Assembly: GCF_039654945.1 (NCBI RefSeq)
Contig: NW_027362008.1
Coordinates: 4,216,001 to 4,280,000 of the forward strand
Reading direction: 5' to 3'
Length of the DNA: 64,000 nt
Source of the DNA: Dendrobates tinctorius
Taxonomy: Eukaryota
This document shows, in pieces, positions 1,728 through 60,215 of this stretch. The notes beneath the pieces are model-generated. The model was not told the DNA's origin. It made no database searches and saw nothing but the letters and a program-made list of their open reading frames with translations. Every line of letters starts with the position of its first letter. Positions within the stretch are counted from its first letter, which is position 1. Position numbers and translations under genes: made by a program.

Positions 1728-2157
1728 ATCCCAGTACTTAAAAAGCGATACTCAATTCATGGAGAATAACTTCTCTGAAATTCAAATTAATTGGGAAAAT
1801 CCAAACGGTTAAGCGATTTTGAATTTTGCTGATCTGACCCATGTTATAAAACAATCTTATCATATATTGTGCACGATGAATGCCGCATGAAGGGAAAAGT
1901 GAAAAACTGCTAAACTTGCTATTCTTGTTCATCTTACCTCACTAAAAAATTGAATTAAAAAAATCATGTATCCCAACGCTGTACCAAAACAACTAGTTTT
2001 GTACCCAAAAACATGTCCTCATGCAGATCTGCATTCAGAAAAATAAAAAGCAATGACTCTCAATATGACAGCTATAAAAAACATATTGTGATTTTCTTGG
2101 GTATGAACATAATCATGTCAGCACACAGAATAAAGTGAACAAGTCAATTATACTGCT
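1728..2157. repeat. Left arm of a ~430-bp inverted duplication (right arm 8986-9412), present in every unit
   Basis: Reverse-complement match, e.g. gcgatactcaattcatggagaataacttctctg versus cagagaagttattctccatgaattgagtatcgc. U3 arms 40322-40751 and 47081-47509; U4 arms 54115-54544 and 61044-61472. Confidence 0.9.
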
Positions 2158-3310
2158 TAAGTTTGAAAATCCACCAGGCTTCCCTATTTTGTAATGTAAC
2201 CTCCGTATCACCCCCTCTGATGGGTGTGTGTATTTTTTCAATTGCATACACCAGAAGTGTTTTCAGGTCATCTTTATGACATTCAATAAAATGTTTTGAC
2301 ACCTGAGATGTGTTCCTTTCCATGTTAATATTCTCTGTGTCATAGATGTGTTCCCCAATTCTTTTCTTCAGCTTGCGTTTTGTGCTTCCAACATGTTTTA
2401 GATGGCAGAAGGTGCACTCCATAATATATACCAAGGTTTTAGTGCTACAATTGATAAAGGTTTTAGTAGCAAAATTCTTGCTTTCACTAGAATCTCCAAA
2501 GCTAGAGCTCTCTTTAGTGTATTTACAGGACTTAGCGCCACACTTATAAAAACCCTTGGTTTTCTGCCAATTTGTGGATTGAATTTGAGACATATTCAAA
2601 AAACTTGGCAAAAGGCTCTGACCTAAAGATGGTGCTCTCCTAGAGACTATTCTAAATCCTTTCCCTATAATACTATCTATATCTGGATCCTCTTTTAATA
2701 CAGATAAATTATTTTGAATAATTCGTTCAATAGAGGCAAACTGGTTACTACACTGCGAGACCAATGTTACAGGAGTGACTGAATGTTCATGTGTGTTACA
2801 CTGAGGTTTGAATCGCGGTTTTTGAGCCACAATGTTTTCAGCTTTGCTTAAACTCCATTGGGTATAACCCCTTTGGGTCAATCACTGCTTAATGTTAGAA
2901 ACTTCCTGTTGATAATCTGTATTTGTGCTACAATTGCATTTCGCTCTCGTCATCTCCCCAACAGGTATACTTTTAATTGTATGTTTAGGATGATGGCTTT
3001 TTCCATGGAGTATAGCATTGCCTGCTGTGTTCTTTCTAAATTTTTGTGTTACTACAGGTTTACCTGAAATTCCTTGTAAAATCAAATAAAAAAAATCAAT
3101 GCATGAAATTTTATGGCGGACCACAAATTTTAAATTCAAGGGATTGCAATTAATATAAAAATTAAAATCCTGTATGGCAGATACATCAGAATTCCAGATG
3201 ATAATGATATCATCTATGTATCTGCCGTCCCAATAGACACAATCTTTAAATGGATTATTTACAGTATAAATATACAGCTCTTCCCACCAGCTCATTACCA
3301 AGTGAAGTTG
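2158..3310 (-). mobile_element. Penelope-like retroelement ORF remnant (RT C-terminus plus GIY-YIG endonuclease), U1; partial duplicate at 6479 to ~6830
   Basis: RYIDDIIIIW, FRKNTAGNAILHGKSHHP, LVYIMEC..HVGSTKRKLKKRIGEH and REAWWIFKL. In-frame TGA at 2882-2884. Truncated after IFKLK. Confidence 0.9.
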
Positions 3311-3769
3311 TCAAGCGATCCACTATATGACCAAGATGAAAATCTTTCTTTGCAATTGCGGCTTGTTCCCAGTCAACTTACGTGCATCGTTATATTTTAC
3401 TTTTGGTTATGTGTGTTTTTCCATGCGTTATTCATCCTGTTTTGAATGTGAATGTTTTTTCTTTGTCATCTAGGAATATTTAACACCATCCACTATATGA
3501 TTAAGATATAAAGTATTTTTCGCAATTGCGGCTTGTTCCTCGCTAGTTTATGTGGATTGTTATGCAGGAGCATATTGCTATCTGTGTTTTTTTATGCGAT
3601 GTAGATCTGGTTTTGAATCAAATTGTTTTCATTTTTGCTTTCACCTAGGTACTTTTACCCTCCTCCGCTGAAATTGTGTTTTTAGATCTGTGTCTCTTAC
3701 TATTACTCTATGACACTCAGTGTATGATAGAGAGAAATGTATTTTTCTTCTTTCTATGATTGTTATTGA

Positions 3770-6478
3770 ATCATAGAATCATAGAATCATAGAATCATAG
3801 AATCGTAGAGTTGGAAGGGACCTCCTGGGCCATCTGGTCCAACCCCCTGCTCAAAGCAGGATTCGCTAAATCATCCCAGTCAGATGTCTGTCCAGCCTCT
3901 GTTTGAAGACTTCCATTGAAGGAGAACTCACCACTTCTCGTGGCAGCCTGTTCCACTCATTGATCACTCTAACTGTCAAAAAGTTTTTTCTAATATCTAA
4001 TCTGTGTCTCTTCCCATTCAGTTTCATCCCATTGCTTCTAGTCTTTCCTTGTGCAAATGAGAATAAAGTTGATCCTTCTACAATGTGACAGCCCTTTAGA
4101 TATTTGTAGACAGCTATTAAGTCTCCTCTCAGTCTTCTCTTTTGCAAACTAAACATTCCCAAATCCTGCAACCTTTCCTCATAAGACAGGGATTGCAGAC
4201 CGGTCACCATTCTGGTCGCTCTTTTCTGAACTTGCTCCAGTTTGTTGATGTCTTTTTTAAAATGTGGTGCCCAAAACTGGACACAATATTCCAGATGAGG
4301 TCTGACCAAAGAGGAGTAGAGGGAAATAATGACTTCACGTGATCTAGACTGTATGCTTCTGTTAATACATCCTAGAATTGCATTTGCCTTTTTTGCTGCT
4401 GCATCACACTGTTGACTCATTTTCAGTCTGTGATCTATTAGTATACCCAAGTCTTTTTCACATGTGCTGTCACTTAGCCCTATTCCTCCCATTCTATATA
4501 TGCTTTTTTCATTTTTATTGCCCAGATGTAGTACTTTGCATTTCTCCCTGTTAAAAACCATTCTGTTAGTTGCTGCCCACTTCTCCAGTTTATTTAAATC
4601 TTTTTGAATCCTCTCTCTCTCTTCTCTAGTATTAGCTATCCCTCCTAGCTTTGTGTCATCAGCAAATTTAATCAGTTTACCCTCAATTCCTTCATCTAAA
4701 TCGTTGATAAAGATGTTGAACAATACAGGGCCCAGGACAGAGCCCTGTGGTACCCCACATGAGACATTCTTCCAACTGGATGTGCAGCCATTTACGACCA
4801 CTCTTTGGGTCCGATCACTAAGCCAGTTATGAATCCACCTAACAGTTGCCTTGTCCATTCCATACTTAGTCATTTTTTCAATAAGGATTGTATGAGAGAC
4901 TTTGTCAAATGCTTTGCTGAAGTCAAGATATACTATATCTACAGCATTTCCTTGATCCACCCAATCAGTGATACCGTCATAGAAGGAAATTAAGTTAGTC
5001 TGACATGACTTATTAGTTAGAAACCCATGCTGACTCTGTTTAATCACTTCATTCTTATCCAGGTATTGACATACAAGTTGTTTAATAATTTGTTCAAAGA
5101 TCTTTCCTGGTATAGAAGTCAGACTCACCGGCCTATAGTTGCCTGGGTCCACCTTCTTCCCCTTTTTGAAGATAGGAACAACATTTGCTCTTCTCCAGTC
5201 TTCTGGCACTTCTCCTGTTCTCCAAGAATTTTCAAAGATTATGGAGAGGGGTTCAAAAATTTCTTCTGCTATCTCCTTCAGTACTCTGGGGTGTAATTCA
5301 TCTGGACCTGGAGACTTGAATTCATTTAGGTTAGCTAACTGTTTCCTCACTATCTTTCTGTTTATAGATATCCTGGATTCTTCTATTCCCTTAATAGGAC
5401 AGTGAATAACAGTTGATGTTGCATTTCCTTTCTGAGAGAAAGCAGATGCAAAATAGGAATTTAAAAGTTCAGCCTTCTCAACATCCTGTCTTACCATTTC
5501 ATCATTTTCATCCTGTAAAAATCCTATAGCATCTTTGACTTTTCTTTTACTTTTGACATATCCCCAAAATCCTTTATTATTGCTTTTGACATCTCTTGCA
5601 AGCCTCAATTCATTTTCAGCTTTAGCTAATCTGATTTGTGCCCTGCAGGTTCTGCAGACAGCATTATATTCTTCTTTAGATATGCCTCCCTCTTTCCATT
5701 TTATCAACATTTTTTTCTTCCTTTTAGCATGTGCTTAAGTTCTGTGTTCATCCATCCTGGTTTCCTTAAATGCTTCCTATTCTTCCCTCTTTTCGGAATT
5801 GTTAACAACTGTGCTTTGAGAATTTCATTTTTCAAGATTTCCCATCCCTCCTGGACATTTTTGTCTTTTAGGATATCCAGCCATTGGACCCCTCCAATTC
5901 TCTTTCTGAATCCCAGTCTCTGAAGCTTCAATCTCTGTGCAGATATATGTGTTTCTAACATACAATGCGACACCCCCTCCTCGTTTATCAAGTCTGTTTC
6001 TTGCAAATAAGTTGTATCCTTCTAGTCTTGTATTCCAATCATGTGTATTGTCCCACCAAGTTTCAGTGATTCCAATGACATCATATTTCTTTTCCTGTGT
6101 TAGTAGTTCCAATTCTCCTTGTTTGTTGCCCATGCTTTGTGCATTAGTATAGAAGCATTTTAGTTTGTGATTGGTTTCTCTTTCTCCAATATTTTTATTA
6201 ATTAGATTCTTTCGTCTTTGTTCTTCCTTTCCACTTCTAATAGCAGAGTTCTCAATAGCATTTGTCAGGTGTATGGCTTTTTCTGGTCTTTTGCTTCCCT
6301 TCCCATGTTGTTCTAGTTTAAAGCTCTCCTTACAAGTGTAGCAAGGCGACTTCCAAATACATGCTTTCCAGTCTTCGTAAGGTGCACCCCATCTCTAGCA
6401 AGTAGTCCATCGTATAAGTAGTTCACTCCGTGATCCAGAAATTCAAATCGTTGCTGACGGCACCATCGACGTAGCCAG
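3770..6478 (-). mobile_element. CR1 LINE family A: 5'-truncated, chimeric, with a 464-bp internal deletion and a frameshift
   Basis: RT motifs GVPQGSVLGP and FADD, endonuclease motif ITETW, (TAGAATCA)n tail at the left end, ORF1 C-terminus at 6313-6477. Confidence 0.97.
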
Positions 6479-7293
6479 TACTTTTAATTGTATGTTTAGG
6501 ATGATGGCTTTTTACATGGAGTATAGCATTGCCTGCTGTGTTCTTTCTAAATTTTTGTGTTACTACAGGTTTACCTGAAATTCCTTGTAAAATCAAATAA
6601 AAAAAATCAATGCATGAAATTTTATGGCGGACCACAAATTTTAAATTCAAGGGATTGCAATTAATATAAAAATTAAAATCCCGTATGGCAGATACATCAG
6701 AATTCCAGATGATAATGATATCATCTATGTATCTGCCGTCCCAATAGACACAATCTTTAAATGGATTATTTACAGTATAAATATACAGCTCTTCCCACCA
6801 GCTCATTACCAAGTGAAATTAGCAAGTGAAGTTGTCAAGCGATCCACTATATGACCAAGATGAAAATCTTTCTTTGCAATTGCGGCTTGTTCCCAGTCAA
6901 CTTACGTGCATCGTTATATTTTACTTTTGGTTATGTGTGTTTTTCCATGCGTTATTCATCCTGTTTTGAATGTGAATGTTTTTTCTTTGTCATCTAGGAA
7001 TATTTAACACCATCCACTATATGATTAAGATATAAAGTATTTTTCGCAATTGCGGCTTATTCCTCGCTAGTTTATGTGGATTGTTATGCAGGAGCATATT
7101 GCTATCTGTGTTTTTTTATGCGATGTAGATCCGGTTTTGAATCAAATTGTTTTCATTTTTGCTTTCACCTAGGTACTTTTACCCTCCTCCGCTGAAATTG
7201 TGTTTTTAGATCTGTGTCTCTTACTATTACTCTATGACACTCAGTGTATGATAGAGAGAAATGTATTTTTCTTCTTTCTATGATTGTTATTGA
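6479..7293 (+). repeat. Direct duplicate of 2968-3769 on the other side of the U1 CR1
   Basis: The same ~0.8-kb segment flanks both ends of the CR1. The left copy lacks 13 bp. Confidence 0.93.
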
Positions 7294-7704: not shown

Positions 7705-8109
7705 TGAAAGCGGCTTTTCTATCCTCTAGTCTGAGTGGATGGCTGTAATTTTTCATTCTGACGTTTGATCCATCATATGATATTCACTCTGTTCCAGAGT
7801 GAAATTGTATTTTCCTCTTTGGTTGTTTTGTAAAAACTCAACATCAATTTTTACAATTATGGTTCTTTCATTTGCTCCCTTATATAAATGTATATTTCTC
7901 TACTTCTGTACTGTGGCTGCTAAGAAGAATTTACAATATACTGCGTTTGTTCTGCGCAATTGAAATATATTCTCGCCTTTATGCCATGTGGAATTCACAT
8001 TCTTGATTTTAGCCATGTATGTCTTCACTTGTAATTCATTTACGTTAATTAGATATGTTCATTGTCTTTCACTAGTGTTCAGCATATTAGTGCTTTCTTG
8101 AACAATGCC

Positions 8110-8157
8110 TGTTATCATGACTAAGGGTGCTGGGACACCTGAAACGCGTTGATAACA
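8110..8157 (+). ncRNA. Minimal type I hammerhead ribozyme motif (A3-U8 core variant), U1
   Basis: Stem I UGUUAUC/GAUAACA, core AUGACUA, stem II AG(G)GUG-cuggga-CACCU, GAAA, palindromic stem III AACGCGUU. AATAAA follows at 8208-8213. Confidence 0.75.
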
Positions 8158-11100
8158 CAATCTTTTGTACCATTCATGCTGATATTTTATCTATTCACAT
8201 CTGAGTGAATAAAGAATTTGTGTTTTCACTTCTGGATCATGGCTTTTTTGTTACATTAGCCATACCTTTCTTTTTTGGGCAATATAGATGTAAAAGTGTT
8301 TTTTAAGTATCAGTTATATTTGTCAATACACTTTTTAAGTGGAACTTATTAGCATGATTTTATAAGCACTTTTTTGCAAGAGAAATAAAGAAAACAGTAA
8401 TTTTAACATTTATTTGTAGTTTAAAGTTTGTGTTATCTGATTTGCTGAAAAAATAACGCAGTAACTGCATTCAGTAGGTCAGTACTAATATGGTGCTGGT
8501 AAATTTGTATAATCTTAATTGTTTTTTATGTTTTGTACAATATACACTTTAAAAAAAAACCATTTTTATACTGTTTTACAATTTTTTGTTAGTGGCGTGG
8601 TATGAAGATTTATTTTTGCCTGAAAATCTGTAGCTTTTGTTGTTAACAGTTTGTTGTACATGCAACTTTTTGATCACTTTTACATTATTTAGGAGGCAAA
8701 ATGAAAGAAAAACACGTAAATTCTGAATTTGTTTTAATATTTTTTTAAACCCCAGTCAATGTTGGGTATAACTGTCGTGGTATCTTTATTTGGTGGACGA
8801 TATCATCACCATATTCTCATAAACTTCACTTATTTATTTTTTGGTTTATTGTAGGTGACGCTGATTGAGGCTTTGTTTTTGGTTATATATGCCTTTCTAG
8901 TTATTATTTATCTCATTGTTTTGCTGGGAAGCAGAAACAAACAGCTATGAATTGGAAATAGTTGTTATTTTTATGGAGTTCGTCCAGCAGTATAATTGAC
9001 ATGATCACTTTATTCTGTGTGCTGATATGATTATGTTCATATCTAAGAAAATCACAATACATTTTTTATAGCTGTCACATTGTGAGTCAATGCTTTGTAT
9101 TTTTCTGACTGCAGATCTGTACGAGGACATGTTTTTGGGTAACAAACTAGTTATTTTTTTTATAGCATCTGGATACATGATTTTTTAATTCAGTTTTTTA
9201 GTGAGATAAGATGAACAAGAATAGCAAGTTTAGCAGTTTCTCACTTTTCCCCTCATACAGCATTGATCATGCACAATAAATAAGATTGTTTTATAACATG
9301 GGTCAGATCAGCAAAATTCAAAATCGCTTAACTGTTTGGATTTTCCCAATTAATTTGATTTTCAGAGAAGTTATTCTCCATGAATTGAGTATCGCTGATT
9401 ATGTACTGGAATCTCTCCATGCTGATATTTTATCATCTTTTCAAATCTGAGTGAACAAAGAATTTGTTTTTTCACTTCATCGTTAAGCTAGGTCATCTCT
9501 TTTTTGGATTTTTTTATGCCAAGACATGGCAGTTCTGTGCTCAGAGCTTCATGATCTATTAACGCTGTGAGATGGATTGTTTTATATGTCTAATGTAATG
9601 CAACAAGTATAAAAATGTTCTATAGTGAAGGTCAAAACTGGCTCCAGTATGTAACAATAAAAATGAAATAATGTAAAAACTTTTTTCACTATCTCATAAA
9701 GCTAAATTTATAAACCTTTCCAAAAATAAAATGAGATTGGCGTACAAAATCAGCTCATCAAATAAGGAAATTCTCCCATTACACTAAAAATAAATTTGCA
9801 GAAACTGGTACATGACCTGTACCCATAGCGGTGCCATTTACTTGGTGGAAGGGATGAAATTAAAAATAAAATCATTTGAGTCAACTAAACATCCAATAAT
9901 ATTTTAAAACAAACCTGTTTTGTGACTAAAAACAGATCTGCTCATCTCTCATCAGTACATGGGTGGTAGAGGTTAGCAGTGAAACAATAGAAATTTATTT
10001 AGATGCATTTACATTGTTACATGATATGAATACAGTTATCTTAGATCTCTTGTGACTACAGGTAAATGTTCTTTACCCAATTTAATAAAAAAATCTACTT
10101 ACATCCAAATCTTCATTTCACTTGACCAAATAGTGAGATGTTGATGTAATTATCCTTTACAGAAACCTCTTGATTATGTCTTCTGCTGACATACTCACAC
10201 TTTTTAAAGAAATGTTTTTATTCAATATTGGCACGTTCACCCGTCTTAATCTAAAGTCACTGGATGCTTCTATAATTAAATGTAAATAAAAAAAAAGAAG
10301 GGGTTTCCAGATATGAAGATGCTATGCTACTGTGAAGGTAACATGGCAAATGCATTTCCAGTAGATGTAAAAACAGTAAATTTCTGAAGATCATAAAAAA
10401 ATAAACATCAATCAGCTATAAAAAGCTAACACATGTATTACATTCTTCAATATGTTGTACACTTGGACGGGATGGCCATGGGGGTGGCATTCACACCAAA
10501 TAAGTATCAACACAATATCTCAGTGCAATTTTGCACATCTTTAATATTGTATAAAATATAGAAAGCCACTTCTACTAGATGTCTAATAGCATGTAAATGA
10601 AGACTGTTATAGCTCCCATTTACATGAATTACACACGTATATACAAGATGTATGAAGCATGGAACACCTTACTATATTAACCCCTTACCTACAATTGACG
10701 TAATATTCCGTCCATGTGACCATGGACCTAATTACCATGGATGGAATATTACGTCATCGCGATCAGCGGCGCCCACGTGGTGAGCGCCGCTGATCGCGGC
10801 CGAGTGTCAGCTAATTATCATAGCTGACACCTGGCACAATGTGTCAGGGGCGGTCACGGACCGCCCCCGAAACGTTAACCCCTTGCACACCGCGATCAAA
10901 CGCGATCGCGGTGTACCGGGGGTTAAAGGGAAGCATCGGCAGGGAGGGGGCTCCCTCCGTGCTTCCCTGAGCCCCCCACGGCAGCGCAATGTGCAGCGCT
11001 GCTGCGGGGGGCTCTTTCCCTACAGGCCCCCGGATCCAAGATGGCGACGGGGGCCTGCAGGGAGCTGACTTCCTCACTGCCTGCAAAGCGCAGGCATGAG

Positions 11101-29343: not shown

Positions 29344-29391
29344 TGTTATCATGACTAAGGGTGCTGGGACACCTGAAACGCGTTCATAACA
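29344..29391 (+). ncRNA. Hammerhead motif, U2 (first stem I pair broken by G>C)
   Basis: Same sequence except cgtt-Cataaca. Confidence 0.6.
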
Positions 29392-30465
29392 CAATCTTCT
29401 GGATCATCTCTTTTTTGATACATTAGCCATACCTTTCTTTTTTGGGCAATATAGATGTAAAAGGGTTTTTTAAGTGTCAGTTATATTTGCCAATTGTAAC
29501 ACTTTTTAAGTGTAACTTATTAGCATGATTTTATAAGCACTTTGTTGCAAGAGAAATAAAGAAAACAGTAATGTTAACATTTATTTGTAGTTTAAAGTTT
29601 GTGTTATCTGATGTGCTGAAAAAATAGCGCAGTAACTGCTTTCAGTAGGTCAGTACTAATATGGTGCTGGTAAATTTGTATAATCTTAATTGTTTTTTAT
29701 GTTTTGTACAATATATACTTAAAAAAACCCCATTTTTATACTGTTTTACAATTTTCTGTTACTGGCGTGGTATGAAGATTTATTTTTGCCTGAAAATCTG
29801 TAGCTTTTGTTGTTAACAGTTTGTTGTACATGCAACTTTTCGATCACTTTTACATTATTTAGGAGGCAAAATGAAAGAAAAACACATAAATTCTGAATTT
29901 GTTTTAATATTTTTTTAAACCCCAGTCAATGTTGGGTATAGATGTCATGTTACCTTTATTCGGTGGATGATATCATGACCATATTCTGATAACCTTCACT
30001 TATTTATTTTTCGGTTTATTGTAGGTGACGCTGATTGAGGCTTTGTTTTTGGTTATATATGCCTTTCTAGTTATTATTTATCTCATTGTTTTGTTGGGAA
30101 GCAGAAACAAACAGCTATGAATTGGAAATAGTTGTTATTTTTATGGAGTTCGTCCAGCAGTATAATTGACATGATCACTTTATTCTGTGTGCTGATATGA
30201 TTATGTTCACATCTAAGAAAATCACAATACATTTTTTATAGCTGTCATATTGTGAGTAGTGTTGAGCATTCCGATACCGCAAGTATCGGGTATCGGCCGA
30301 TACTTGCTGTATCGGAATTCCGATACCGACTTCCGATATTTTTTCAATATCGGAATTCGGCATCGGAATCGGAAGTTCAAAGTTGATTGACGGCCTGACG
30401 TCATCATGATGCGCGGTGTGTGCGCATCATGATGCGCCGTTATTTCGGGCCTTCCGGGGGTCTCT

Positions 30466-30732: not shown

Positions 30733-30873
30733 AAGCATCGTCCGATGGGACTACAAGTCCCATCTGGCGATGCCTGCTACCATGACAGTGATTGACACAT
30801 TAGCCAATGATGGGACAGTAGTAGTCCCATCATCCGGCTAATGTGTTAAATGTTAAAAAAAAAAAAAAAAAAA

Positions 30874-31780
30874 TACTACATACATACTACATACATACTA
30901 CATGCTACATACATACTACATATATACTACATGCATGCTACATACATACTACATGCTACATACATACTACATATATACTACATGCATGCTACATACATAC
31001 TACATGCTACATACATACTACATACATGCTACATACATGCTACATACATACTGCATGCTACATACATACTACATACATACTACATACATACTACATGCAT
31101 GCTACATACATACTACATACATACATACTACATGCATGCTACATACATACTACATGCATGCTACATGCATGCTACATACATACTACATGCTACATACATA
31201 CCACATACATACTACATACATGCTACATACATACTACATACATACTACATACATACTACATGCATGCTACATACATACTACATACATACTACATGCATGC
31301 TACATACATACTACATGCATGCTACATGCATGCTACATACATACTACATGCTACATACATACCACATACATACCACATACATACTACATACATGCTACAT
31401 GCTACATACATACTACATACATACTACATATATACTACATGCATGCTACATACATACTACGTACATACTACATGCATGCTACATACATACTACATGCATG
31501 CTACATACATACTACATGCATGCTACATGCATGCTACATACATACTACATGCTACATACATACCACATACATACTACATACATGCTACATGCTACATACA
31601 TACAACATATATACTACATGCATGCTACATACATACTACATGCTACATACATACCACATACATACTACATACATACTACATACATACTACATACATACTA
31701 CATGCTACATACATACCACATATATACTACATACATACAATACATCCATACAATACATACATAGACATACAGTACATATA
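30874..31780 (+). repeat. (TACA/TAC/TGCA) compound microsatellite, left arm; inverted copy at 32369-32921
   Basis: Direct reading. It is the source of the H/T/Y/C-rich spurious ORFs. Confidence 0.92.
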
Positions 31781-34700
31781 ACATAGAGTAACATACTTAC
31801 CAATACTTGTCACATTATTCCCCGAAGCCATTGTCTTTTCCGGAATAAATATTAACATAACAAACCACAAAAATACTCACCCACGATCCGAAGCAGTCCA
31901 CGAGTGTGTCCCACGACGATCTTGGGTAGAGAACTGCAGCATCAGATGATGCTGCCGTTCTCTACGGGCTGCAGGATTCCAATGACGGAAGGTAGGTATC
32001 CTTCCGCACTGTATTCCTCCGCCACTTAAAAAAACAAAAAGTCCCTAGTCTCACTTTATGCCATTGCTGCGTGGGAATTTCCCACACAGCAATGGCATAA
32101 AGTGAGACTAGGGACTTTTTTTTTTTAAGTGGCGGAGGAATACAGTGCGGAAGGATACCTACCTTCCGTCATTGGATTCCTGCAGCCCGTAGAGAACGGC
32201 AGCAACAGCTGATGCTGCAGTTCTCTACCCAAGATCGTCGTGGGACACACTCGTGGACTGCTTCGGATCGTGGGTGAGTATTTTTGTGGTTTGTTATGTT
32301 AATATTTATTCCGGAAAAGACAATGGCTTCGGGGAACAATGTGACAAGTATTGGTAAGTATGATACTCTATGTTATATGTACTGTATGTCTATGTATGTA
32401 TTGTATGAATGTATTGTATGTATGTAGTATATATGTGGTATGTATGTAGCATGTAGTATGTATGTAGTATGCATGTAGCATGCAGTATGTATGTAGCATG
32501 CATGTAGTATGTATGTAGCATGTAGCATGTATGTAGTATGTATGTGGTATGTATGTAGCATGTAGTATGTATGTAGCATGCATGTAGTATATATGTAGTA
32601 TGTATGTAGCATGTAGTATGTATGTGGTATGTATGTAGCATGTAGTATGTATGTAGCATGCATGTAGTATGTATGTAGTATGTATGTAGCATGCATGTAG
32701 TATGTATGTAGTATGTATGTAGTATGTATGTGGTATGTATGTAGCATGTATGTAGCATGCATGTAGCATGCATGTAGTATGTATGTAGTATGTATGTAGT
32801 ATGTATGTAGCATGCAGTATGTATGTAGCATGCATGTAGCATGCATGTAGTATGTATGTAGCATGTAGTATGTATGTAGCATGTAGTATGTATGTAGCAT
32901 GCATGTAGTATGTATGTAGTATTTTTTTTTTTTTTTTTAACATTTAACACATTAGCCGGATGATGGGACTACTACTGTCCCATCATTGGCTAATGTGTCA
33001 ATCACTGTCATGGTAGCAGGCATCGCCCGATGGGACTTGTAGTCCCATTGGACGATGCCTGCACAGACCCCCGGAGCCTGCACAGACCACCGGCAGGCCG
33101 GCACAGCCCCCCGGCAGGCCGGCACAGCCCCCCGGAGCCTGCACAGACCACCGGCAGGCCGGCACAGCCCCCCGGCAGGCCGGCACAGCCCACCGGAGCC
33201 TGCACAGACCACCGGCAGGCCGGCACAGCCCCCCGGCAGGCCGGCACAGACCACCGGAGCCTGCACAGACCCCCTGGCAGGCCGGCACAGCCCCCCGAAA
33301 GGCCCGTACAGACCCCAGAAAGGCTGTACAAAGCAAAAACAGGGTTTTTCTTATTCCGATACCGGAAGTCCCATAGACTTGAATGGGACTTCCGGTATCG
33401 GAATCGGCGATACCGATACTTTTTTTAAAGATCGGCCGATCCATTCCGATCCGATACTTTGACGTATCGGACGGTATCGCTCAACTCTAATTGTGAGTCA
33501 ATGCTTTGTATTTTTCTGACTGCAGATCTGTATGAGGACATGTTTTTTGGGTAACAAACTAGTTATTTTGGCATAGCATCGGGATACATGATTTTTTTAA
33601 TTCAGATTTTTAGTGAGGTAAGATGAACAAGAATAGCAAGTTTAGCAGTTTCTCACTTTTCCCTTCATACGGCATTCATCGAGCACAATAAATGATAAGA
33701 TTCTTTTATAACATGGGTCAGATCAACAAAATTCAAAATCGCTTAACTGTTTGGATTTTCCCTATTAATTTGATTTTCAGAGAAGTTATTCTCCATGAAT
33801 TGAGTATCGCTGATTATGTTCTGGGATCTCTCCATGCTGATATTTTATCGTCTTTTCAAATCTGAGTGAACAAAGAATTTGTTTTTTCACTTCATCGTTA
33901 AGCTAGGTCATCTCTTTTTTGGATTTTTTTACGCCAAGACATGGCAGTTCCGTACTCAGAGCTTCATGATCTCTTAAAGCGGTGAGCTGGATTGTTTTAT
34001 ATGGCTAATGTAATGCAACAAGTATAAAAATGTTCTATAGTGAAGGTCAAAACTGGCTCCAGTACGTAAAAATAAAAATGAAATAATGTAAAAACATTTT
34101 TCACTATCTCATAAAGCTAAATTTATAAATCTTTCCAAAAATAAAATGAGATTGGAGTACAAAATCAGCTCATCAAGTAAGGAAATTCTCCCAATACACT
34201 AAAAATAAATTTGCCGAAGCTGGTACATGACCTGGACCCATAGCGGGGCCATTTATTTGGTGGAAGAGATGAAATTAATATAAAAACATTTGAGACAACT
34301 AAAATTCCAATAATATTTTAAAACAAACCTGTTTTGTGATGAAAAAACATATCTGCTCATCTCTAGTCAGTACATGGGTGGTAAAGGGTAGCAGTGATAC
34401 AAATGAAATATATTTATATGCATTTACATTGTTATATGATATGAATACAGTTATATTAGATCGCTTGTGACTACAGGTAAATGTTCTTTACCCAATTTAA
34501 TAAAAAAATCTACTTAGGTCCAAATCTTCATTTCATTTGACCAAATAGTGAGAAAAGAATGGGTTACCAGCTATGAAGATGCTATGCTGCTGTGAAGGTA
34601 ACATGGCAAATTCATTTCCAGGAGATGTAAAAACAGTAAATTACTGAAGATCATAATGAAAAAAACATCAATAAGCTATAAAAAGCTAACACATGTATTA

Positions 34701-46204: not shown

Positions 46205-46252
46205 TGTTATCATGACTAAGGGTGCTGGGACACCTGAAACGCGTTGATAGCA
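46205..46252 (+). ncRNA. Hammerhead motif, U3 (G.U wobble in stem I)
   Basis: Same core; the 3' arm reads GAUAGCA. Confidence 0.7.
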
Positions 46253-60167: not shown

Positions 60168-60215
60168 TGTTATCATGACTAAGGGTGCTGGGACACCTGA
60201 AACGCGTTGATAACA
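60168..60215 (+). ncRNA. Hammerhead motif, U4
   Basis: Identical to the U1 motif. Confidence 0.75.

What the first reader, a model, noticed from the sequence alone, without database searches (positions are those of the whole stretch)
8110..8213. Minimal hammerhead ribozyme with a compensatory A3-U8 core pair in every unit, upstream of and co-oriented with the kinase gene
Seen: UGUUAUC-AUGACUA-AGGGUGcugggaCACCU-GAAA-CGCGUU-GAUAACA gives a perfect 7-bp stem I, a bulged stem II, the GAAA box and a self-complementary stem III (AACGCGUU), with a predicted cut after GUU at 8150. An AATAAA follows about 50 nt later. Copies are at 8110, 29344, 46205 and 60168. Established: the canonical core is CUGAnGA, in which C3 and G8 form a tertiary Watson-Crick pair, and Penelope-like elements carry minimal type I hammerheads with palindromic stem III in their pseudo-LTRs. 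Here both positions changed together (A3, U8), so the pair is kept but a CUGAnGA search would miss it. Inference: this is the pseudo-LTR ribozyme of the adjacent Penelope remnant. It lies ~2.9 kb 5' of the TATA box in U3 and U4 on the kinase strand, so ribozyme plus poly(A) signal could cut read-through RNA between array copies. That role is speculative, and such minimal motifs usually need to dimerise.
Basis: partly seen in the sequence, partly recalled or inferred. Interest (0 to 1): 0.8.

Follow-up and report, generated by a model that had tools for sequence, protein, structure and literature searches.

The report
Variant-core hammerhead relic of Penelope mini-element
The 48-base motif is real and is a Penelope-type minimal hammerhead ribozyme with the core pair swapped to A3-U8. 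It belongs to a short, very high-copy mobile element of this frog genome that was copied passively along with the kinase array, and nothing shows it insulates the kinase genes.

Summary
The four copies are paralogues of one insertion, carried in array units that are 94-99% identical, so "in every unit" is not independent evidence.

Every hammerhead feature except the letters at positions 3 and 8 is present. It aligns without gaps to canonical-core (CUGAUGA) minimal hammerheads that I found in metagenome contigs. Those share its extra base after A9, the GGGUG/CACC helix II and the GAAACGCGUU segment.

In contigs of public runs, word depth over 8116-8169 is about 20-80 times that of the flanks. 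This holds in this species and in a second one, so the motif is the conserved block of a large repeat family. I could not read the family's letters at positions 3 and 8, because the table was truncated.

The neighbouring Penelope ORF remnant lies on the opposite strand, is 5'-truncated and is not contiguous with the motif. The motif plus a roughly 80-nt tail looks like a separate non-autonomous Penelope derivative.

There is no sign of constraint in the array. The unit-2 copy has lost the base pair next to the cut site and the AATAAA. No RNA data were available.

The scan had already noted at least eight other A3-U8 hammerheads elsewhere in this genome. A natural U3-A8 swap is published; I found no paper describing a natural A3-U8.

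The parts
8110..8157 (+). Minimal type I hammerhead-like motif, unit 1. Stem I is 8110-8116 with 8151-8157. The core A3-A9 is 8117-8123, followed by an unpaired A at 8124. Helix II is 8125-8129 with 8136-8140, and its loop is 8130-8135. G12-A14 is 8141-8143. The palindromic helix III ACGCGU is 8144-8149 and U17 is 8150. The predicted cut is between 8150 and 8151.
29344..29391 (+). Unit 2 paralogue. G1.1 is changed to C, so the C2.1-G1.1 pair next to the cut site is lost. The tail is deleted directly after it.
46205..46252 (+). Unit 3 paralogue. One A>G change in the stem I 3' strand turns U-A into U-G.
60168..60215 (+). Unit 4 paralogue, identical to unit 1.
8172..8250 (+). 3' tail of the mini-element. 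It includes the AATAAA at 8208-8213. It is homologous to the tail that follows the + strand Penelope 3' fragment. It is absent from unit 2 (8165-8228 deleted).
8986..9412 (+). 5'-truncated Penelope 3' end: the last 13 nt of the ORF plus the 3' UTR. It is 90% identical to 2157-1731 on the minus strand. It is a separate insertion, in the same orientation as the motif.
9418..9500 (+). Tail of that Penelope fragment. It is 88% identical to 8175-8232 over 61 nt and carries AACAAA where the motif's tail has AATAAA.
1731..3301 (-). Penelope-like remnant on the opposite strand. It comprises the RT motif C (YIDD) ORF at 2882-3301, an in-frame stop, the GIY-YIG endonuclease ORF at 2144-2881, and the 3' UTR at 2143-1731. 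It is 5'-truncated and split from its 0.8-kb duplicate (6479-7293) by a CR1 LINE.
3769..6478 (-). CR1-type LINE (AP endonuclease plus RT) lying between the Penelope remnant's duplicated 0.8 kb. It is not part of the ribozyme element.

Best explanation
The motif is the ribozyme block of a short non-autonomous derivative of Penelope-like retroelements: a hammerhead, about 15 nt of spacer and a Penelope 3' tail, roughly 110-145 nt in all. One copy inserted upstream of the kinase gene before the array units were duplicated. All four copies descend from that one insertion.

The hammerhead is of the Penelope 'min-HHR' kind, with an extra base after A9, a 5-bp helix II and a tiny palindromic helix III that needs a second copy to form a stable helix. 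It carries A3-U8 instead of C3-G8.

Inference: in the master elements the ribozyme processes the retroelement RNA, probably as a dimer in tandem or multimeric transcripts. The shared tail lets the Penelope reverse transcriptase copy the mini-element. At this locus the copy is a solitary passenger with no role in kinase expression.

Shown: the anatomy, the paralogy, the high copy number in two species, the tail homology, the strand relations and the neutral drift.
Inferred: catalytic competence of the A3-U8 core, mobilisation in trans, and that A3-U8 is the family's majority state.
For: - All invariant hammerhead positions other than 3 and 8 are present, and the three helices form.
- The motif aligns without gaps to canonical CUGAUGA min-HHRs in metagenome contigs L001-L003. 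They share the extra base after A9, GGGUG/CACC helix II, GAAACGCGUU and the inner stem I pairs UC..GA. On this alignment 93% of cells pair, against 28-52% when the partners are slid.
- Contig word depth is 1586, 1115, 2536 and 488 in bin 8116-8169, against about 30-80 in the flanks. This is seen in runs of this species and of a second species. Similarity starts at 8115 and mostly ends at 8145-8157, with unlike flanks; some contigs run on into the tail to 8217-8231.
- Loose-end letters of contigs in run X6 show a tail-like ...UAUGCUGA... about 15 nt after the block, so hammerhead plus tail is a family layout.
- The tail at 8175-8232 is 88% identical to 9418-9478, which follows a Penelope 3' UTR.
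[quoted passage not shown] It also matches the published view that animal retrozymes are Penelope derivatives (bioRxiv 10.64898/2026.07.22.740005).
- 13 contigs in run X2 carry a head-to-head junction centred on UCAUGA with CUAAG on both arms, which means A3 and U8 in other copies.
- The motif drifts at the flank rate within the array.
Against: - The letters at 8117 and 8122 in other family copies could not be read.
- The contigs are assemblies, not reads, so depth is not a copy number.
- No target-site duplication or empty site was found, so the element's exact ends are uncertain.
- G10.1 pairs with U rather than C.
- No cleavage or RNA evidence of any kind exists. Published Penelope min-HHRs cleave poorly even as dimers.
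- The explicit double-hammerhead fold (-28.5 kcal/mol) is no better than two monomers (-27.8) and is worse than an extended duplex (-36.4).
Confidence: 0.7

Rival explanations
1. This is a decayed canonical hammerhead. The family has CUGAnGA, and this copy acquired C3>A and G8>U by neutral mutation before the array duplicated, so the apparent compensation is coincidence.
For: The copy is old and drifting neutrally. U11.1 can be explained by CpG decay of C11.1-G12. Canonical relatives with the same helices exist elsewhere. The family letters at positions 3 and 8 were not visible.
Against: It needs two specific transversions that happen to restore a Watson-Crick pair, while all ten other invariant core positions stayed intact. 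Palindromic-junction contigs from other loci show UCAUGA and CUAAG, that is A3 and U8. First readers of other windows of this genome independently listed at least eight further A3-U8 motifs (unverified leads).
Confidence: 0.13
2. One reading: this is the pseudo-LTR ribozyme of the adjacent Penelope remnant. Together with the AATAAA it cuts read-through RNA between kinase array units.
For: A Penelope remnant lies 1-5 kb to the left. The motif is co-oriented with the kinase ORFs. AATAAA lies 58 nt downstream.
Against: The remnant is on the opposite strand, is 5'-truncated at about 6812-6900, and is separated from the motif by non-Penelope sequence. Unit 2 lost the AATAAA and the pair next to the cut site without further consequence visible in the sequence. 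The homologous tail has AACAAA. There is no partner for dimerisation within 14 kb. Single min-HHRs showed no detectable cleavage in vitro. No RNA evidence exists.
Confidence: 0.05
3. It is a chance look-alike or another kind of conserved block, for example a C/D-box-like RNA or an RT-recognition or promoter element that merely resembles a hammerhead.
For: The relaxed descriptor yields about 0.5 chance hits per window. Rfam gives no hammerhead hit and weak C/D snoRNA hits of 14-17 bits.
Against: The full feature set occurs about once in 400 simulated windows. The motif aligns without gaps to canonical min-HHRs. The Rfam control shows that a canonical-core min-HHR also gets no hammerhead hit and the same kind of weak C/D hit, so Rfam's silence is uninformative. 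The snoRNA scores are far below the gathering scores of 40-60. ARAGORN finds no tRNA.
Confidence: 0.07

Closest known systems
Minimal hammerhead ribozymes of Penelope-like elements (Cervera & De la Pena 2014, PMC4209133), including their U3-A8 core covariant in Schistosoma mansoni
   Same: Both are type I hammerheads. Both have an unpaired nucleotide between A9 and G10.1, a helix II of 5 bp or more, a very short palindromic helix III that implies dimeric action, and a variable helix I. Both occur in very high copy number, mostly as solitary motifs, in an amphibian-type genome. Both tolerate a Watson-Crick swap at positions 3-8.
   Different: Here the swap is A3-U8, not the published U3-A8. G10.1 pairs with U rather than C. 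This copy is not inside a pseudo-LTR flanking an ORF on the same strand.
Non-LTR retrozymes, the non-autonomous Penelope derivatives of animals (Li, Clavereau & Pollet 2026 preprint, 10.64898/2026.07.22.740005)
   Same: Both are short non-coding elements carrying a type I hammerhead. Both show homology to a Penelope terminus. Both are abundant in amphibians and often occur as dispersed monomers.
   Different: There is no tandem repeat at this locus. No circular RNA or activity has been shown. The unit is at the small end of the reported range of 51-972 bp.
Canonical-core min-HHRs in metagenome contigs L001-L003
   Same: The match is column for column: UC, a 7-nt core, 1 extra nt, GGGUG, a 6-nt loop, CACC(C/U), GAAA, CGCG, UU, GA.
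   Different: Those have C3, U7, G8 and G10.1-C11.1, sit in different flanks and come from an unknown host.
Engineered 3-8 base-pair exchanges in hammerheads (Przybilski & Hammann 2007; Nelson & Uhlenbeck 2008). These are cited from memory and via PMC3088659 and PMC3884650; the papers themselves are not held.
   Same: They share the principle that positions 3 and 8 form a Watson-Crick pair whose identity can be exchanged with retained activity.
   Different: Those are laboratory mutants of extended ribozymes. The activity of A3-U8 in a minimal Penelope context is untested.

Membership tests
Hammerhead ribozyme, type I (Penelope min-HHR) | Invariant core U4 G5 A6, A9, G12 A13 A14 | tested here: met
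   8118-8120, 8123 and 8141-8143
Hammerhead ribozyme, type I (Penelope min-HHR) | Letters C3 and G8 | tested here: not met
   A at 8117 and U at 8122 in all four copies
Hammerhead ribozyme, type I (Penelope min-HHR) | Watson-Crick pairing potential between positions 3 and 8 | tested here: met
   A-U here and C-G in the aligned canonical relatives. A natural U3-A8 is accepted in the literature.
Hammerhead ribozyme, type I (Penelope min-HHR) | Helices I and II closing the core; A15.1-U16.1; H17 not G | tested here: met
   Stem I is 7 bp and helix II is 5 bp, with A8144-U8149 and U8150. Unit 2 has lost the 1.1-2.1 pair.
Hammerhead ribozyme, type I (Penelope min-HHR) | G10.1-C11.1 pair | tested here: not met
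   G8125 faces U8140, a wobble. C11.1-G12 would be a CpG, so decay is plausible.
Hammerhead ribozyme, type I (Penelope min-HHR) | Unpaired nucleotide between A9 and 10.1, and a palindromic 15.2-16.2 / loop 3 (traits listed in PMC4209133) | tested here: met
   A8124, and ACGCGU at 8144-8149
Hammerhead ribozyme, type I (Penelope min-HHR) | Match to the Rfam hammerhead covariance models | tested here: inconclusive
   No hit at E<=10. A canonical-core min-HHR control also gets none.
Hammerhead ribozyme, type I (Penelope min-HHR) | Self-cleavage after position 17 | not testable with these tools
   No RNA run holds the locus, and all runs are kept as contigs, which cannot show ends.
Pseudo-LTR of a Penelope-like element | Lies in a direct terminal repeat flanking, and on the same strand as, an RT plus GIY-YIG ORF | tested here: not met
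   The only RT/GIY-YIG remnant is on the minus strand, 5'-truncated and non-contiguous. The proposed partial tandem upstream is not significant: 95 of 500 shuffles score as well.
Non-autonomous Penelope derivative / non-LTR retrozyme | Short non-coding unit with a type I hammerhead and homology to a Penelope terminus; high copy number | tested here: met
   The tail is 88% identical to the tail after a Penelope 3' UTR. Word depth is 20-80 times that of the flanks in two species.
Non-autonomous Penelope derivative / non-LTR retrozyme | Tandem arrangement of units; circular RNA | tested here: not met
   This is a solitary monomer, and the nearest copies are 14-21 kb away in other array units. Circular RNA is not testable.
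C/D box snoRNA | Score at or above the family gathering threshold | tested here: not met
   snR75 scores 17.4 bits (gathering 40) and sR35 scores 14.1 bits (gathering 60). The same artefact appears on a canonical hammerhead.

The most novel reading that the evidence does not exclude
A3-U8 is not decay. It is the selected, catalytically competent core of a large lineage of Penelope-derived ribozyme elements in poison frogs, present in at least two species. It would be the second natural 3-8 exchange after U3-A8. Hammerhead censuses built on CUGAnGA would then miss thousands of copies. The UCAUGA palindrome that A3 creates might also favour the head-to-head insertions seen in this genome.
Probability: 0.4. 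Interest if true: 0.55.

Novelty: new variant of a known kind. Interest (0 to 1): 0.4.

Why it matters
Natural variation in the hammerhead core is rare and informative, because the 3-8 pair was only recognised from the 2006 full-length structure. A high-copy natural A3-U8 lineage would add in vivo support that only the pairing matters at these positions, not the letters. It would also show that standard descriptors and the Rfam models under-count Penelope-type ribozymes in amphibian genomes. For this locus the practical message is negative: the motif is a passenger repeat and should not be annotated as a regulatory part of the kinase array.

Tried and rejected
- **Rfam at gathering and at E<=10:** no hammerhead hit. 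A control on a canonical min-HHR shows this is uninformative.
- **C/D snoRNA reading:** rejected on score.
- **tRNA-derived SINE:** no tRNA found.
- **Partial-tandem (pseudo-LTR-like) structure**, 7993-8039 against 8193-8240: not significant, with 95 of 500 shuffles as good.
- **Target-site duplication:** none convincing.
- **Other diverged copies in the window:** none.
- **Fetching family copies through proteins:** the GIY-YIG ORF gave no hit at E<=1e-10. A 43-aa peptide read across the motif shared no words with any candidate.
- **Viral contigs:** no match.
- **Pfam on ORFs of the metagenome contigs:** nothing found.
- **Dimer thermodynamics:** the double-hammerhead fold is feasible but not favoured by nearest-neighbour energies.
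- **Papers not held:** Przybilski & Hammann 2007, Nelson & Uhlenbeck 2008 and Lunse et al. 2017.
Full report
**Observation**

A search with up to three mismatches finds four copies and no more, at 8110, 29344, 46205 and 60168, with none expected by chance.

The unit-2 copy has G>C at the first base after the predicted cut. That destroys the C2.1-G1.1 pair. The unit-3 copy has A>G in the 3' strand of stem I, which turns U-A into U-G.

A self-comparison of the window shows that the four copies lie in segmentally duplicated array units that are 94-99% identical. They are therefore paralogues of one insertion, and "in every unit" carries no independent weight.

Across 1 kb around the motif the four units differ at 53 of 932 ungapped flank columns. 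The motif has 2 variable columns where 2.7 are expected. The array therefore shows no constraint on it, although the test has little power.

**Anatomy**

- Stem I is 7 bp.
- The 5' core strand reads A3 U4 G5 A6 C7 U8 A9.
- An unpaired A follows at 8124.
- Helix II is GGGUG/CACCU (5 bp, with G10.1 opposite U11.1) and has a 6-nt loop.
- Then come G12 A13 A14, A15.1, CGCG, U16.1 and U17.
- The predicted cut is between 8150 and 8151.

ViennaRNA recovers stem I and this helix II as the minimum-energy fold (z = -2.7). [quoted passage not shown]

**Chance**

My own descriptor left positions 3 and 8 free. It required stems I and II of at least 4 bp, GAAA, U16.1 and H17. In the window it finds only these copies on either strand.

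In 400 simulated windows built with a second-order Markov model:
- The relaxed descriptor hits 0.46 times per window.
- A Watson-Crick 3-8 pair is present in 0.10 hits per window.
- The feature set seen here (stem I of at least 6 bp, a palindromic helix III, helix II of at least 5 bp) occurs once in 400 windows.

That is rare for one window. It still implies tens of chance hits per gigabase, so the structure alone does not settle the matter.

**Evidence that it is hammerhead-derived**

First, I scanned metagenome contigs with the motif's helix II and helix III fixed and positions 3, 7 and 8 left as N. The scan returned three contigs whose motif has the canonical core: CUC, CUGAUGA, U, GGGUG, a 6-nt loop, CACCC, GAAA, CGCG, UU, GAG.

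One of these contigs carries a second canonical motif with a different helix II (GGAUAU/AUGUCC) and a CAUG palindrome in helix III.

The frog motif aligns to these without a single gap. On that alignment:
- 93% of cells form standard pairs, against 28-52% when the partners are slid.
- Six pairs show changes on both sides.
- The 3-8 pair is A-U in the three frog rows and C-G in the three others.

The frog rows are not independent of each other.

Second, I laid contigs of four public runs on 7900-9500 at 80% likeness. Summed word depth in bin 8116-8169 is 1586, 1115, 2536 and 488, against about 30-80 in most other bins. Two of the runs are from this species, one is from a second species, and one is a further run of this species of unknown library type.

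Depth at 8130 reaches 2418 and 3968. Similarity in many contigs begins at 8115 and ends between 8145 and 8157, with unlike sequence beyond. Some contigs run on into the tail, to 8217-8231.

The conserved block is thus the ribozyme from the innermost stem I pairs to the cut site. Helix I arms and flanks vary, which is the pattern reported for Penelope min-HHRs.

**What could not be read**

I therefore cannot state the family's letters at 8117 and 8122.

The indirect evidence for A3-U8 elsewhere is as follows:
- 13 contigs of one run carry a head-to-head junction whose loose letters are the reverse complement of CUAAGGGUGC around a central UCAUGA. That means A3 and U8 on both arms.
- First readers of other windows of this genome listed at least eight further "A3-U8 hammerhead" loci, including a 146-bp mobile element. 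These are unverified leads.

**Surroundings**

The neighbouring Penelope remnant is real but weakly scored. It has a YIDD-bearing ORF at 2882-3301 and, after one in-frame stop, a GIY-YIG ORF at 2144-2881. Pfam gives E = 0.008, below its threshold. The ESM Atlas nearest clusters are eukaryotic GIY-YIG proteins, scoring 0.97.

The remnant is on the minus strand. It has no RT sequence upstream of about 6812-6900. It is therefore 5'-truncated more than 1 kb short of the motif, and on the other strand.

On the + strand, 8986-9412 is a separate 5'-truncated Penelope 3' end, 90% identical to 2157-1731. The 60-80 nt after it (9418-9500) are 88% identical to 8175-8232, which is the sequence following the motif.

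Loose-end letters of contigs in run X6 show the same tail start about 15 nt after the ribozyme block.

Taken together, the motif plus its tail is a short non-autonomous element that shares the Penelope 3' end. This matches the recent proposal that animal retrozymes are Penelope derivatives. I found no convincing target-site duplication, and a suspected partial tandem upstream is not significant.

**Function**

Published single min-HHRs show no detectable cleavage, and dimers cleave only weakly.

At this locus the nearest partner copy is 14-21 kb away. By nearest-neighbour energies:
- The explicit double-hammerhead fold is -28.5 kcal/mol.
- Two monomers total -27.8 kcal/mol.
- An extended duplex is -36.4 kcal/mol.

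Unit 2 has lost 8165-8228, including the AATAAA, by a deletion at a CTT microhomology. It has also lost the pair next to the cut site. The homologous Penelope tail has AACAAA. No run on record as RNA holds the locus, and all runs are kept as contigs, which cannot show RNA ends.

The proposed insulator role therefore has no support. The most likely account is a passenger relic.

**Comparison with what is known**

Penelope min-HHRs and a compensatory U3-A8 core are published, with about 1300 copies in Schistosoma mansoni (PMC4209133). Several further U3-A8 examples are reported in PMC3088659, which also states that covarying 3-8 mutants were already known to be active in vitro.

Searches of the held library for a natural A3-U8 found nothing. 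Three key papers are not held, so absence from the literature is not proven.

Rfam is blind to this class. It finds no hammerhead even in the canonical-core control.

**Verdict**

This is a real Penelope-type minimal hammerhead in a high-copy mini-element, with an apparently undescribed A3-U8 version of a known kind of core covariation. It is ordinary at this locus. The scan has met the same variant repeatedly elsewhere in this genome.

Noticed in passing
window 9352-9411: This is a second short block with very high contig depth: 352-760, against about 75-160 in the bins either side. Dozens of contigs diverge at 9352 and at 9386-9388 into flanks that agree with each other (agreement 0.6-0.77). 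It therefore seems to be a piece shared with another abundant repeat family. It is not hammerhead-like.
   Followed up: no
window 8115-8120, and contigs of run X2: With A at position 3, the start of the ribozyme reads UCAUGA, a perfect 6-nt palindrome. 13 contigs show head-to-head copies joined exactly there. The palindrome may favour the inverted 5' junctions typical of Penelope insertions. A canonical C3 would not give a palindrome.
   Followed up: partly
window 29396-29400 (unit 2), equivalent to 8165-8228: A unit-2-specific 64-nt deletion removes most of the tail, including the AATAAA. It is bounded by a CTT microhomology.
   Followed up: yes
L003 32-71 (+) and 4449-4488 (-); L001 1180-1221 (-); L002 4380-4419 (-): Metagenome contigs, probably eukaryotic host DNA, carry canonical-core minimal hammerheads. 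L003 has two on opposite strands 4.4 kb apart, with different helix II and helix III palindromes. ORFs of 100 aa or more have no Pfam hit.
   Followed up: partly
window 2882-2884: A single in-frame stop separates the YIDD (RT) and GIY-YIG reading frames of the Penelope remnant. The minus-strand 3' UTR homology ends at about 1731, where a different repeat begins.
   Followed up: partly
window 30843-32950 (unit 2 only): This is a block of degenerate tandem repeats with an inverted copy (30873-31806 against 32348-32922, 82-88% identical). Its ORFs hit left-handed beta-helix / hexapeptide Pfam models (LbH_EIF2B, E = 1.3e-14). That is probably a repeat-translation artefact.
   Followed up: no
window 8116-8157 against Rfam: Minimal hammerheads, both this one and the canonical control in L001, draw weak C/D-box snoRNA hits. 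The cause is that CUGAUGA/AUGA and CUGA mimic the C and D boxes. This is a recurring false lead for annotation.
   Followed up: yes
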